DNA of 64,000 nucleotides from Haliotis rubra (taxonomy: Eukaryota). Positions within the stretch are counted from its first letter, which is position 1. Each line of letters begins with the position of its first letter. The stretch covers positions 186,001 through 250,000 of the forward strand of contig NW_025767166.1 in the NCBI RefSeq assembly GCF_003918875.1. Reading direction: 5' to 3'. The translations under genes were made by a program, and so were the position numbers. Under the pieces are notes generated by a model. It was not told the DNA's origin. It worked only from the letters and a program-made list of their open reading frames with translations, and ran no database searches. Of this stretch, positions 29,340 to 32,300 are shown in pieces.

Positions 29340-32300
29340 TTGGGCGACTGGCTCGATTTTACAATAAAGACACTCGCCTCGCCATAAAAAAGGACAGTAC
29401 GGGATTGGCGAGTTGCTTGTCAGTTCACAACTCATCAGCCGAACTGCTTGTAGTTGACACGGCAGGATGCCTGCTCTCGCCAGCGCGCTGGCTCACTTGT
29501 GAGCGGAGCTATCTCACACTGTGCTGTTAATGTCCGCGACTTGGACTGAACTTCGCAGCTTAATCCGCGGATCCGCGGAAAGCACGGGAAGAGGGGCGTG
29601 AGTGTACCTCGTGTGAGGTAGCTTTGACGCGGCGGCTCAAGATTTTGTGTCGACATACTTGATCGTCAAATTTTATATGCGATCCGAAATAACAATGAAA
29701 AGTTATCAGAAGTAGCTAGCATGACTGTTGGGCTCAGATTAATCTGAGCGAGCAGGGCATAAGACCCGGTTGTCGACCATACGCAAGCATAACGTGTAAC
29801 AAGTGTCCAAATTTTCGACGATTCTCTCCATCATGCAGTTTTCCCCACGGATCCGATATTACTACTGAACAAACCTTACCGCTTAGAAGATCCGAAGTTC
29901 CACTAATGATCCGAAGAAAATACGTCACAACCAGGCAACGGGCTCACGGCCCATCGCTACGTGGTCACGGTACTCGTCTCCGTAGATTAAGCAGCGTTTG
30001 AAATCCGAGCAAACGCAGAAAACAACTATGGTAAAGCGAATCCGAAAACCGATGGCAAAATCCGAGATATTGGCTTCTGTTTCGTCATAGGTACCTGAGA
30101 ATCATCAACGTGAACAACGACAGGCGCTTTTCATTCGCCTCTTTTCCCGTGGCAAGGGATCCGAAAAAAATACTGCCCTACACTTTAAAAAAAAAAACCA
30201 ACGTTTTTTTTCCCCTCGTCGTGACCCCAATTGATATTAGGCCAGACCCTCCTCATCTGTGTGACCAGTGCAGACCAACAGCCGATGATCGGCGTTCTTG
30301 CACGTGTCCGTATCAGTTGGATTAGGGTGGTGGGTTTGATTGGTGGTAGGGTTGGGTTGGGTTGGGTTGGGTTGGGTTGATCTAAGTTGGGAGGGAGGTG
30401 GTGGGGGAAGGGAGGGGTTTAAGTGAAACTCCATGCTCGGCCAGATTTAAATCTCGATGTTATAATATTATTCTAATTAACCTGGTTTACGTAACATGCA
30501 TAATTGCAATTCCTCTAATTGGAAGTGGGGGGAGGTCACAATTAGGTATCTGTTTTGCCGTAATTGCTCTGACGTCAATGGTCCAGTAGTTGTTATTGTT
30601 TGTTGTTGTTGTTATTGTTATTGTTATTGTTTCGCACATTAACAAACACCTAGGACACACACACACTAAAGCCAACAACAACGCATTTTGTCAGAATGAA
30701 CTGGCCACCGGATCCGAAACTAACCAGACATGTCGGGCCCATGCACAGAAATTATTCTCGCGAGTGAGATTAATCTTGCCGTAATGGACACTAACTTCCC
30801 CGCTACTAGATGGCATGTAGTCGCCAATCCCGACGTTCAAAAATCAGCGAAGTTTCTATGAGTCATGCAGTTTTCCCCACCTGTCCGATATTACCATTGA
30901 AGCTGCATAGGGAGTCGGCATATCCGAAATTTGTTTGTCGCTAGCACTTCCTGGTGGTTTCGCTGAAGCTGTCGTGCCCGCTCCCGAGCATTCTCGACAA
31001 TCCTCCGTGCCATGTGGTCACGATGGTCGGTTTAACGCACCTCTATTGCATATTTTGTCCCTGATCCGAAATTAGAGCGTGAACAAAGTTTTGCTGAGAC
31101 GGATCCGATGCTAAGCGCGGTATTCGTTCCCATTTGCCGATGTCCTAAAACATGCCGAACAAATCGCCACAGTCACGGCGTTGAGCGGAGGGATTCCTCA
31201 AAAGATCGACTTCAATTCGCACTTCTGCACCGATCCGATGTTATCAAATAATCAACGCTAAGTGCCGGAAGATCCGAAGTTATGTGTGTAACCTGAGCCG
31301 GTTCATGTAGCCCGCGGGAACAACGGTTTAGTCAGTCATATGGTCTGCCAAAATGGACTGTCCTTAGGTTGTTTTGTATGCTTTGTTACGCCAACCAACT
31401 AGCTATTGACACCGTAATAAGTTCCAGAATATGCGTGTCTCTAAGAAACATTTGTCGTCATCAGAAGCCTCATAATGAGCTGGATATAATCATTCCTTCT
31501 AGAAAATAGATCTGTCACACTGTCCACATAATCAATCACCTTCTACAGGGCAGTCTATACACGTATATTATATATGATAGGTCCGGGGAAACCATGCGCA
31601 ATTCAAGGTTGTCAGATGGACACAGTTCATGATTACCCCATTTTGTGGTGACTGGTTCATGAAAGACCCACACACTTGGGGAACCGCAGGCCAGCAGAAC
31701 ATAATCATCTTGGAGTTGATGACCAGTTCCGATTTTAAAACACTGGACCAACTGGTTAAAAACTAAAACAAAATAATTTGCTAGACCACCTCCATATTAA
31801 AAATAGAATATAACAAACACTTGTTTGGCGGTGGAGTTTATTTAATAAGATAGGTAAACAAGCCGCTGAGGTGAAAAATATCCGACAGCCCAACACCGAC
31901 CTTAAAATACTATATATAAACACTACTGACACCATAATCATGGCATGTATTGAAGTAAAACTGAGCTATGAGTCATGTGGTACGCCGAACACAGCAATAT
32001 TCCAGCTATATGGCGGCATGCGTGGTTAAGAATAAAAGAGACAATTCCTGTTGTTATGCAAATTAAACGTCATGACACATAAATTCTGCAATTACATCAG
32101 TCACAAAAATATTTTTTCACTATCGCCAATCCATATAGCCACAACGTTGTGCTCAACTACATACACTAAGAACATTACTGAGTTTGCAAGTTTAAAATTG
32201 TCAATATCGAGAGTGTCAAATAACCAAGTCATATTCCATATGTCAGTCTATCGACCTATAAACTTCATGAACAGGATTAGTTGTTCGATGTACCCGACGC

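What the first reader, a model, noticed from the sequence alone, without database searches (positions are those of the whole stretch)
29681..31110. Modules A and B are diverged paralogues that keep motif order and spacing
Seen: module A has GATCCGAA 29681, AGATTAATCT 29736 (+55), TCATGCAGTTTTCCCCAC..TCCGATATTAC 29831 (+150), GATCCGAA 29889 (+208), GTGGTCACG 29961, CGTGAACAA 30109. Module B has GATCCGAA 30711, AGATTAATCT 30767 (+56), TCATGCAGTTTTCCCCAC..TCCGATATTAC 30863 (+152), TATCCGAA 30921 (+210), GTGGTCACG 31014, CGTGAACAA 31078. I could not align the intervening sequence by eye. The CCAAT 12-mer CGGGATTGGCGA (29400) recurs inverted at 30821. Module C shares GATCCGAAGTTATG (31271 and 32339) and an inverted TGGGGAAGCTTGCA variant (32351). 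Inference: conserved islands at fixed distances in otherwise turned-over DNA indicate purifying selection on a spacing-constrained element rather than neutral repeat decay.
Basis: partly seen in the sequence, partly recalled or inferred. Interest (0 to 1): 0.75.

Follow-up and report, generated by a model that had tools for sequence, protein, structure and literature searches.

The report
Phased 12-base box array in abalone DNA
A single-copy, non-coding, CpG-rich stretch of abalone DNA is an ancient tandem repeat that has lost all similarity between its copies except a 12-base box (GATCCGAARTTA) and a few other short words kept at almost fixed distances, so it is most likely a docking platform for an unknown DNA-binding protein, though no function has been shown.

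Summary
Every word sits at the coordinates given. Modules A and B share a collinear chain of islands at offset 1030-1032, far above shuffled controls, while the DNA between the islands is no more alike than random sequence.

- Three conserved blocks: A 29414-30272, B 30689-31323, C 32322-32865.
- Each block holds about four monomers of roughly 130-180 nt, and each monomer is headed by the box (C)nGATCCGAARTTA.
- There are 20 exact ATCCGA cores plus one degenerate copy in the blocks, all on the + strand. The minus strand of the whole 64 kb has no strong copy.
- Box-to-box intervals recur (157/158/157/155 nt of unrelated sequence; +39; +58), P about 5e-4.
- In A and B the boxes fall in phase with a 10.0-bp period.

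The blocks are single-copy and CpG-rich (o/e 1.0-1.5). They align at about 93-94% in a more distant congener whose spacers do not align. They have no coding frame, no Rfam match and no excess RNA structure.

My best reading is a tandem-repeat-derived cis-element that binds an unknown protein on one face of the DNA (confidence 0.4). The rivals are an unstructured lncRNA platform, a relic of a transposon's repeated binding sites, and neutral decay. Whether it is transcribed is unknown. The scan noted this same stretch once before (s1-344860) and found nothing like it on other DNA.

The parts
29414..30272 (+). Module A. It has a GC-rich head (29414-29680) containing the perfect 16-nt palindrome at 29564-29579, followed by four box-headed monomers. 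Box cores (ATCCGA) start at 29682 | 29851, 29890, 29909 | 30003, 30040, 30060 | 30159.
   Evidence: This is exactly the block that aligns in a 3,444-nt contig of the more distant congener, with 60 mismatches in 859 nt. Box list. CpG o/e 1.0-1.45.
30689..31323 (+). Module B, four monomers. Box cores start at 30712 | 30883 (degenerate, TGTCCGA), 30922 | 31064, 31103 | 31233, 31272. All fall at residues 2-4 modulo 10.
   Evidence: Aligned block in the distant congener, with 35 mismatches in 635 nt. Box positions. No open frame longer than 71 codons.
32322..32865 (+). Module C, four monomers. Box cores start at 32340 | 32519 | 32647, 32687, 32705 | 32814. It shares only the box and its spacing pattern with A and B.
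   Evidence: Aligned block in the distant congener, with 39 mismatches in 544 nt. Pairwise comparison with A and B, box positions. The 163-codon frame 32396-32887 has no relatives and no Pfam match.
29809..29869 (+). The longest A-B island, copy A. It is the tail of monomer A1a (TCATGCAGTTTTCCCCAC) joined to the box that heads A1b.
   Evidence: 61 nt at 77% identity to 30841-30901. The 39-nt core has 34 of 39 identical bases.
30841..30901 (+). The same island, copy B.
29736..29745 (.). Palindromic 10-mer AGATTAATCT, copy A, 54 nt after the first box core.
   Evidence: The window holds only two copies, at 29736 and 30767. Their offset of 1031 is in register with the chain.
30767..30776 (.). Palindromic 10-mer AGATTAATCT, copy B, 55 nt after the first box core.
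28085..28101 (+). Outlying double box (ATCCGATCCGAAATTG) upstream of a transposon insertion. It may be the remains of a further monomer.
   Evidence: A related species' contig skips 28279-28838.
30273..30688 (.). A-B spacer, made of (GGGTT)n and (GTT)n microsatellites and AT-rich DNA. It is not part of the element.
   Evidence: It does not align in the distant congener. Repeats. CpG o/e is 0.64 in the 30200 and 30400 bins and 0.93 in the 30600 bin, which runs into module B.
31324..32321 (.). B-C spacer. It includes a very high-copy short repeat at about 31940-32136.
   Evidence: Word depth is 9e5 there against about 50 in the modules, and the spacer does not align in the distant congener.

Best explanation
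The stretch 29.4-32.9 kb (perhaps starting at 28.09 kb) is a very old, now single-copy higher-order tandem repeat: three modules of about four monomers each, 130-180 nt per monomer. The monomers have diverged until no similarity is left between them. The exceptions are a 12-nt box, GATCCGAARTTA, at the head of each monomer, extra box copies at +39 and +58, and, in A and B only, a palindromic AGATTAATCT and the word TCATGCAGTTTTCCCCAC.

I read the boxes as binding sites for an unknown sequence-specific DNA-binding protein. They all point the same way and, in A and B, lie on one face of the helix. Their spacing is held by selection, while the DNA between them is free to change in sequence but not in length. 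On this reading the array works at the DNA or chromatin level as a cooperative docking platform in an unmethylated CpG-rich island: an enhancer, silencer, promoter cluster or boundary element. It lies about 14 kb downstream of an apextrin-like gene and among transposons.

Shown here: the architecture, the enrichment, the polarity, the spacing, the single-copy state, the between-species alignment, and the absence of coding or RNA-structure signals. Inferred: protein binding, selection and the regulatory role.
For: - Box enrichment and polarity: ATCCGAA occurs 17 times, all on the + strand, with 15 copies in 28.09-32.82 kb against 5.5 expected for the whole window. At 12 bits or more on a 14-column matrix, 19 of 20 hits lie in 27.8-33 kb and none lies on the minus strand of the 64 kb.
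- The box extends beyond the core used to pick copies: G at -1 in 16/22, A at +6 in 16/22, A or G at +7 in 19/22, T at +8 and at +9 in 14/22 each, A at +10 in 15/22.
- Spacing: the intervals between the first and second box are 157, 158, 157 and 155 nt in A1, B1, B2 and C2, although those intervals score like shuffled sequence. The triple 0/+39/+58 occurs in A1b, A2a and C2a, and the pair 0/+39 in B1b, B2a and B2b. Recurring distances against random placement give P about 5e-4. The assumed neutral indel drift would give a length SD of 9-19 nt.
- Helical phasing: the best period is 10.0 bp. Pointwise P is 0.0003. Corrected for the scan over periods, P is 0.018 with the degenerate copy and 0.057 without it. 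Module B copies all fall at residues 2-4 modulo 10.
- DNA level rather than structured RNA: folding z-scores for the box-bearing monomers lie between -0.84 and +0.95 on both strands, and A and B share no consensus structure on the + strand.
- Not coding.
- Single-copy and conserved: depth is flat at about 50 across the modules, against 1e3-9e5 in the transposon bins. The distant congener's contig aligns only in the three modules, at 5.5-7.2% mismatch. Another congener shows 3.3-4.7% mismatch in the pieces that cover the modules, against 11% in spacer 31559-31801.
- CpG o/e is 1.0-1.5 in the modules, against 0.1-0.6 in the 61-64 kb bins I printed; only one 400-nt window beyond 34 kb reaches 1.0.
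Against: - There is no evidence of binding, open chromatin or regulatory activity, and no candidate factor.
- The same orientation of all copies could simply be inherited from tandem duplication.
- The phasing is only borderline after correction, is absent in module C, and rests on few independent distances.
- The contrast between species is partly confounded: the spacers are full of microsatellites and transposon insertions, and in the closest congener the flanks (3.2-6.2% mismatch) differ little from the modules (1.6-3.5%).
- There is a tension in rates. The modules evolve slowly between species, yet their monomers are saturated relative to each other. That requires either an extremely old duplication or a phase of fast divergence.
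- Transcription could not be assessed. The only possible RNA run is tiny, is held as contigs and has no depth in the modules.
Confidence: 0.4

Rival explanations
1. The modules are exons or segments of a + strand long non-coding RNA. The box (GAUCCGAARUUA) would then be a repeated single-stranded landing site for an RNA-binding protein, as in other repeat-bearing lncRNAs.
For: - The strand polarity is absolute: 0 strong copies on the minus strand.
- The modules are no more structured than shuffles, slightly less so in A1, B1 and B2 (z up to +0.95), which would suit single-stranded binding sites.
- Read directly from the sequence: a TATA-like ATAAAAAA at 29385 just before conservation begins, a GTGAGT at 29598, a good acceptor-like TTTTGTCAG ending at 30694 where block B begins, and an AATAAA at about 32937 just after block C.
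- The conserved-blocks-with-fast-spacers pattern resembles exons and introns.
Against: - No RNA evidence at all: the one possible RNA run has zero depth in the modules, though it is too small to count as evidence of absence.
- Spacing fixed to 1-2 nt and a 10.0-bp phase have no obvious meaning in an unstructured RNA.
- The other module borders have no convincing splice sites.
- Polarity can be inherited from duplication.
Confidence: 0.17
2. The array is a relic of a mobile element, for example a region of repeated transposase-binding sites or the internal tandem repeats of an old DNA transposon or Helitron-like element. The box and its spacing were selected while the element was active, and the locus now drifts neutrally.
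For: - From general knowledge, arrays of a 10-12-nt binding motif over a few hundred bp are typical of the subterminal regions of some DNA transposons.
- The locus is surrounded by transposons: a MITE at 28.28-28.84 kb, Tc1/mariner at 33.3-34.5 kb, a LINE at 38-40 kb and a Maverick at 46-51 kb.
- Family members more than 20% diverged would not have been laid on the stretch, so 'single-copy' is true only at 80% identity or above.
Against: - No inverted partner array exists: there are no strong minus-strand boxes anywhere in the 64 kb.
- There are no terminal inverted repeats around the array and no transposase frame within it.
- CpG o/e of 1.0-1.5 contrasts with the CpG-depleted transposons nearby.
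- The modules align between species while the adjoining unique spacers do not.
- No match turned up in the viral or metagenome collections, but these do not cover mollusc repeats.
Confidence: 0.15
3. This is neutral decay of an old tandem duplication, with islands created by chance or by short patches of gene conversion, and nothing is under selection.
For: - Tandem duplication explains the collinearity and the polarity.
- The 39-61-nt island could be a conversion tract.
Against: - Neutral decay cannot keep six core positions identical in 20 exact copies while the flanking positions reach random-level identity.
- Conversion tracts of 7-12 nt are not expected.
- Interval lengths are kept to 1-2 nt although the sequence is saturated.
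- The box is enriched well over 100-fold above expectation inside the modules (my estimate).
Confidence: 0.08
4. The islands encode something small: the 11-codon frame shared by A and B (ATG at 29833 and 30865, stop at the same place), the 163-codon frame in C, or small RNA genes, one per monomer.
For: - Both copies of the island carry ATG plus 10 codons plus TGA in the same register (read).
- Module C has an open frame of 163 codons.
Against: - All three codons that differ between the two short frames change the amino acid (read).
- The frame in C has no relatives and no family match, and the boxes fall in all three of its phases.
- No Rfam family matches, even at E up to 5, and no tRNA was found.
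- There is no excess folding energy.
Confidence: 0.04

Closest known systems
Homotypic clusters of transcription-factor binding sites in conserved non-coding, CpG-island-like elements (including tandem-repeat-derived enhancers)
   Same: Many copies of one short motif packed into a few hundred bp of non-coding, CpG-rich DNA that is conserved between species. The array probably arose by tandem duplication.
   Different: All copies point one way. Spacing is fixed to 1-2 nt over about 160-nt intervals whose sequence is unrelated. There is a monomer period of about 130-180 nt. Neither the factor nor the activity is known.
CENP-B box in alpha-satellite DNA (a protein-binding box at a fixed place in ~171-bp monomers that otherwise diverge)
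   Same: Nucleosome-length monomers in a higher-order repeat, with a short conserved box in register while the rest of the monomer drifts.
   Different: This array has only about 12 monomers and is single-copy, not a megabase satellite. Its monomers are far more diverged, at random level. The box sequence is unrelated, and nothing links it to a centromere.
Arrays of same-orientation insulator sites (the gypsy Su(Hw) array) and clusters of TFIIIC B-boxes acting as chromatin boundaries
   Same: Multiple same-strand copies of a ~12-nt site within a few hundred bp, thought to act together at the chromatin level. The reverse complement of the box (TTCGGATC) is one base away from the B-box core TTCGANTC.
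   Different: The mismatch falls on the A that is invariant in B-boxes and tRNA T-loops, and it does so in every copy. No tRNA or tRNA-like gene is present. The box does not match the Su(Hw) consensus as I recall it. This resemblance is a lead from memory only.
Repeat-motif lncRNAs (Xist A-repeat, roX boxes)
   Same: A strand-specific array of a short word in a non-coding locus.
   Different: Those motifs sit in conserved stem-loops, whereas no structure or covariation is seen here. Transcription is unknown.
miR-10 / miR-100 mature sequence
   Same: As I recall the mature sequences, they contain AGAUCCGAAUUU (miR-10) and GAUCCGAACUU (miR-100). The copy at 32518 matches the former 12 of 12, in sense.
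   Different: No hairpin and no Rfam mir-10 hit. None of the boxes is preceded by the seed part of the miRNA. The box consensus differs at +7 and +10. I treat this as coincidence.

Membership tests
Conserved non-coding element with a homotypic binding-site cluster | One motif statistically enriched within a few hundred bp | tested here: met
   Of 17 ATCCGAA in the window, 15 lie in 4.7 kb, against 5.5 expected for the whole window; none of 100 shuffles reached 17. By matrix scan, 19 of 20 hits at 12 bits or more lie in the region.
Conserved non-coding element with a homotypic binding-site cluster | Non-coding | tested here: met
   A and B have 6-15 stops in every frame. The one long frame, in C, has no relatives and no Pfam match.
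Conserved non-coding element with a homotypic binding-site cluster | Conserved between species above the neutral background | tested here: inconclusive
   Only the three modules align in the most distant congener, at 5.5-7.2% mismatch. One spacer piece shows 11% against 3.3-4.7% in another congener. In the closest congener the flanks and modules differ by a factor of two or less, and the spacers are rich in microsatellites and transposons.
Conserved non-coding element with a homotypic binding-site cluster | Bound by a factor, or has regulatory activity | not testable with these tools
   No chromatin, binding or reporter data were available.
CpG-island-like unmethylated domain | CpG observed/expected well above the surrounding DNA | tested here: met
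   o/e is 1.0-1.5 in the modules, against 0.24-0.9 in the spacers and 0.1-0.6 in the 61-64 kb bins printed. Methylation itself was not measured.
Satellite DNA or high-copy repeat family | Many copies in the genome | tested here: not met
   Contig word depth is flat at about 50 over the modules, against 1e3 to 9e5 over the neighbouring transposon pieces, at 80% likeness.
Structured non-coding RNA (any Rfam family, miRNA, tRNA-like) | Match to a covariance model, or folding energy or consensus structure above background | tested here: not met
   No Rfam hit at the gathering score, and only two chance-level hits at E up to 5. ARAGORN found nothing. Folding z is -0.84 to +0.95 for the monomers and -2.7 (+ strand) / -2.2 (- strand) only for the palindromic head of A (-1.9 over 29400-29670). 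The A/B alignment gives 0 consensus pairs on the + strand.
TFIIIC B-box cluster (extra-TFIIIC or boundary sites) | B-box core with the invariant TTCGA (GGTTCGANNCC) | tested here: not met
   The reverse complement of every box reads TTCGGAT, with G in place of the invariant A (box list). The consensus is recalled from general knowledge.
DNA-transposon subterminal repeat region | Terminal inverted repeats with an oppositely oriented partner array, and dispersed family members | tested here: not met
   There are no strong minus-strand boxes in the 64 kb and no flanking inverted repeats. The array is single-copy at 80% identity or above. More diverged family members elsewhere in the genome could not be searched for.

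The most novel reading that the evidence does not exclude
The locus is a previously undescribed kind of mollusc chromatin element: a short, single-copy 'micro-satellite-like' higher-order repeat of nucleosome-length monomers. Selection preserves only a 12-nt box, its orientation, its distance to the next box (to within 1-2 nt) and its helical phase. The array would then position nucleosomes and a box-binding protein in register, for example as a boundary or organiser that keeps a CpG island unmethylated between a transposon-rich, CpG-depleted domain and an immune-type apextrin gene.
Probability: 0.15. Interest if true: 0.75.

Novelty: new variant of a known kind. Interest (0 to 1): 0.45.

Why it matters
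Almost nothing is known about cis-regulatory grammar in molluscs. This locus supplies three concrete things to test:
- A defined 12-nt word.
- An internal natural experiment: about 12 paralogous monomers in which everything changed except the word, its orientation and its spacing.
- A clear prediction: moving a box by half a helical turn should matter more than changing the sequence between boxes.

If the box binds a protein, that factor and its other genomic targets could be found directly. If the array turns out to be a transposon relic, it instead records how transposase-binding arrays decay.

Tried and rejected
- **Coding.** The frames in A and B are full of stops. The 163-codon frame in C is not on record as a called gene, has no relatives in the word-based protein search and no Pfam match. 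The shared 11-codon frame shows only amino-acid-changing differences.
- **Known RNA families.** Rfam at gathering score over the window, Rfam at E up to 5 over 29.2-33.0 kb and ARAGORN gave nothing relevant.
- **RNA structure.** Monomer folding energies match shuffles (an earlier run, timed out). The A/B consensus fold is empty on the + strand and trivial on the minus strand. The palindromic head of A gives z of only -1.9 to -2.7.
- **Other collections.** The 29-base island pattern has no match in metagenome contigs. The 16-mer has 8 scattered hits in viral contigs, which I judge to be about chance.
- **Literature.** The 12-mers occur only in cloning primers with BamHI sites. A search for Haliotis satellite DNA gave nothing relevant.
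- **Earlier notes of the scan.** Only a re-reading of this same stretch turned up, and nothing by sequence.
- **Resemblances recalled from memory and dropped.** The 3' part of miR-10/100 (sense strand, no hairpin). The B-box (fails at the invariant A). Su(H), kappaB and homeodomain-like words in the islands (untestable here).
- **A nucleosome-type 10-bp WW signal.** There is a peak at 10.0 bp (z 4.7). After masking the boxes, several peaks appear between 9.75 and 11.25 bp under a null that is probably too narrow. I do not rely on it.
- **A further module near 63.2 kb.** A single box copy sits there in CpG-poor DNA, with no array.
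Full report
**Setting.** The window is eukaryotic. Earlier notes of the scan call the genome abalone; I did not check this myself. The finding lies in non-coding DNA about 14 kb downstream of a + strand apextrin-like gene, identified by a MACPF fragment at 10087-10401 and an ApeC domain at 15147-15518. 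Transposons surround it: a short element with 27-nt inverted ends at about 28.28-28.84 kb, a very high-copy short repeat at about 31.94-32.14 kb, Tc1/mariner at 33.3-34.5 kb, a LINE reverse transcriptase at about 38-40 kb, and a Maverick-type polymerase B at 47.1-48.9 kb.

- The best local A-B alignment, 29831-29869 against 30863-30901 with 34 of 39 identical bases, scores 53. Dinucleotide shuffles give 20.3 +/- 2.3.
- An end-free global alignment scores 489 against 346 +/- 25.
- In a k-mer dot plot of 29.3-33.0 kb, the diagonal band at offset 1030 +/- 2 holds 23 shared 7-mers. The maximum in shuffles is 11.
- Identity is strongly uneven: 75-85% at 29810-29870 and 35-57% elsewhere, even with gaps allowed.
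- In ungapped register, the stretches between the islands are 25-33% identical. Their alignment scores match those of shuffled sequence, with z from -0.6 to 0.4 once the islands are removed.

**Some anchors are weak.**
- GTGGTCACG (offset 1053) and CGTGAACAA (offset 969) are not at fixed spacing. Two shared non-box 9-mers is close to the 0.96 expected by chance. The first does sit in a 21-nt stretch at 76% identity, so it may be homologous after a 21-nt indel.
- The inverted CCAAT 12-mer is, by my estimate, about what chance gives in 3.5 kb. It lies before the first box in A but after it in B.
- Module C shares only the box with A and B.

**The real architecture.** The recurrent word is a 12-nt box. 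Taking the 22 ATCCGA cores in 28.0-33.0 kb, the flanks carry information too: G at -1 (16/22), A at +6 (16/22), A or G at +7 (19/22), T at +8 and +9 (14/22 each) and A at +10 (15/22). This gives (C)nGATCCGAARTTA.

A 14-column matrix finds 19 of its 20 hits at 12 bits or more inside 27.8-33 kb. It finds none on the minus strand of the entire window.

The box positions fall into about four monomers per module:

| Module | Box core starts, by monomer |
|---|---|
| A | 29682 / 29851, 29890, 29909 / 30003, 30040, 30060 / 30159 |
| B | 30712 / 30883 (degenerate), 30922 / 31064, 31103 / 31233, 31272 |
| C | 32340 / 32519 / 32647, 32687, 32705 / 32814 |

Monomer lengths are 128-182 nt.

The same sub-patterns recur across monomers:
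- 0/+169/+208 occurs in A1, B1 and B2. A1 therefore matches B2 at offset 1382 as well as B1 at 1030.
- 0/+39/+58 occurs in A1b, A2a and C2a.

Randomly placing the same number of boxes within each module gives as many equal distances, or as many equal triples, in only about 1 of 2,000 trials.

**Spacing without sequence.** The DNA between the first and second box is 157, 158, 157 and 155 nt long in A1, B1, B2 and C2. Those four stretches are nevertheless no more alike than shuffles.

I ran a simple drift simulation with assumed parameters: 0.75-1.5 substitutions per site between copies, 0.05-0.1 indels per substitution, and a mean indel length of 3 nt. The net length change then has an SD of 9-19 nt. 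The chance of three differences of 2 nt or less is 1e-3 to 1e-2. This is an inference that depends on those assumptions.

**Helical phase.** Within modules, the box starts are coherent at a period of exactly 10.0 bp. Pointwise P is about 0.0003. Corrected for scanning 51 periods, P is 0.018 with the degenerate copy and 0.057 without it.
- Module B is tight: all copies fall at residues 2-4 modulo 10.
- Module A is fairly tight: residues 9-3.
- Module C is not phased.

Because the distances are inherited, few of them are independent. I treat this as suggestive support for a constraint at the DNA level.

**What it is not.**
- Not coding.
- Not a known RNA family.
- Not a structured RNA: monomer folding z-scores run from -0.84 to +0.95 on both strands. 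The A/B consensus fold is empty on the + strand and trivial on the minus strand.
- Not a high-copy repeat: word depth of a related species' contigs is flat at about 50 across the modules, and 1e3 to 9e5 over the transposon pieces.

**Between species.** A 3,444-nt contig from the most distant species I laid on the stretch aligns, at 80% likeness or better, in exactly three pieces:

| Piece | Mismatches |
|---|---|
| 29414-30272 | 60 |
| 30689-31323 | 35 |
| 32322-32865 | 39 |

The pieces keep the same order and orientation. Unaligned stretches of 310 and 632 nt stand where the window has 416 and 998 nt.

Two closer species align through most of the spacers as well. One shows 11% mismatch in spacer 31559-31801, against 3.3-4.7% in the pieces that cover the modules. 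In the other, the flanks (3.2-6.2%) differ little from the modules (1.6-3.5%).

The modules therefore look more conserved than their surroundings. The contrast is partly due to microsatellite and transposon turnover in the spacers, so I call it moderate evidence of constraint.

The modules are also CpG-rich. Observed/expected is 1.0-1.5, while the transposon-rich DNA downstream is depleted (0.1-0.6 in the 61-64 kb bins). This suggests the modules escape germline methylation.

**An unresolved tension.** The modules change slowly between species (5.5-7.2% to the most distant one), yet the paralogous monomers are saturated relative to each other. Either the duplications are vastly older than the genus, or the inter-box DNA went through a fast phase after duplication, or it is under pressure to differ. 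I cannot decide among these.

**Interpretation.** The retention of six invariant core positions plus informative flanks in about 21 copies has no neutral explanation. All copies share one orientation, at fixed distances, in DNA that is otherwise randomised.

| Reading | Confidence | Main points |
|---|---|---|
| Host cis-element: an array of binding sites for an unknown DNA-binding protein on one face of the helix, in an unmethylated CpG-rich island, acting as enhancer, silencer, promoter cluster or boundary | 0.4 | Favoured by the spacing, the phasing, the CpG state and the lack of RNA structure |
| Unstructured + strand lncRNA with repeated protein landing sites | 0.17 | Favoured by the absolute polarity and by promoter-, splice- and polyA-like words at the block edges; untested, because the only possible RNA run is tiny and empty here |
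| Relic of a transposon's repeated binding-site region | 0.15 | Explains past selection on box and spacing; does not fit the lack of an inverted partner, the CpG richness or the block-wise conservation |
| Plain neutral decay | 0.08 | Explains collinearity and polarity only |
| Small peptide or small RNA | 0.04 | No supporting signal |

**Comparison with known systems.** The logic resembles three known arrangements:
- Homotypic binding-site clusters.
- The CENP-B box in alpha-satellite: a box in register in nucleosome-length monomers that otherwise diverge.
- Same-orientation insulator arrays.

The locus is a member of none of these by any test I could run. It is single-copy, and the box matches no consensus I could verify. 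Its reverse complement misses the B-box at the invariant A. The likeness to the 3' part of miR-10/100 is in sense and has no hairpin.

I rate it a new variant of a known kind, of moderate interest. The architecture is unusually clean and directly testable, but function, factor and transcription are all unknown.

Noticed in passing
window 8489-15518 (+): Exons of an apextrin-like gene: a MACPF fragment at 10087-10401 (E 6e-4, just under the Pfam cut-off) and an ApeC domain at 15147-15518 (E 6e-13). It is the nearest recognisable host gene, about 14 kb upstream of the array.
   Followed up: partly
window 1408-3475 (+): Two long open frames (360 and 198 aa) that are extremely rich in Asp/Glu, with repeated 'DDLTDxDVDDLLDD'-type units and a poly-Met run. 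The DNA is CpG-rich. Only weak Med9/Utp14 matches, below the cut-off.
   Followed up: no
window 28279-28838: A short element with 27-nt inverted repeat arms 28285-28311 / 28519-28545 (96% complementary). It is high-copy in all species laid on the stretch. A related species' contig joins 28278 to 28839, so that species may lack the insertion at this site.
   Followed up: partly
window 31940-32136: A very high-copy short repeat, with word depth up to 9e5 against about 50 for single-copy DNA. Parts of it recur at 27543-27562 and 27625-27645. It is probably a SINE-like element inserted in the B-C spacer.
   Followed up: no
window 46273-50848 (+): Maverick/Polinton-type element: protein-primed DNA polymerase B (47137-48861, E 5e-33) and a weak A32-like packaging ATPase match (50357-50848).
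   Followed up: no
window 29564-29579: A perfect 16-nt palindrome, TCCGCGGATCCGCGGA, in the GC-rich head of module A. Read by eye, a 14-nt palindrome GCCAGCGCGCTGGC lies about 90 nt upstream. This head is the only part with some excess folding energy (z -1.9 to -2.7).
   Followed up: partly
window 32396-32887 (+): An open frame of 163 codons inside module C. It is Arg/Ser-rich, has no relatives and no Pfam match, and the boxes fall in all three of its phases. It is probably a chance frame in CpG-rich DNA.
   Followed up: yes
window 12381-12440 (-): A borderline Rfam tRNA match (29 bits, equal to the gathering score, E 0.059) that ARAGORN does not find. It may be a tRNA-derived repeat fragment.
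   Followed up: no
window 34000-64000: The downstream half of the window is CpG-depleted (o/e 0.1-0.6 in the 61-64 kb bins; only one 400-nt window reaches 1.0) and transposon-rich. This contrasts with the CpG-rich islands at 1.2-3.8, 6.4-7.2 and 29.4-32.9 kb. The array sits at or near this change in CpG content.
   Followed up: partly
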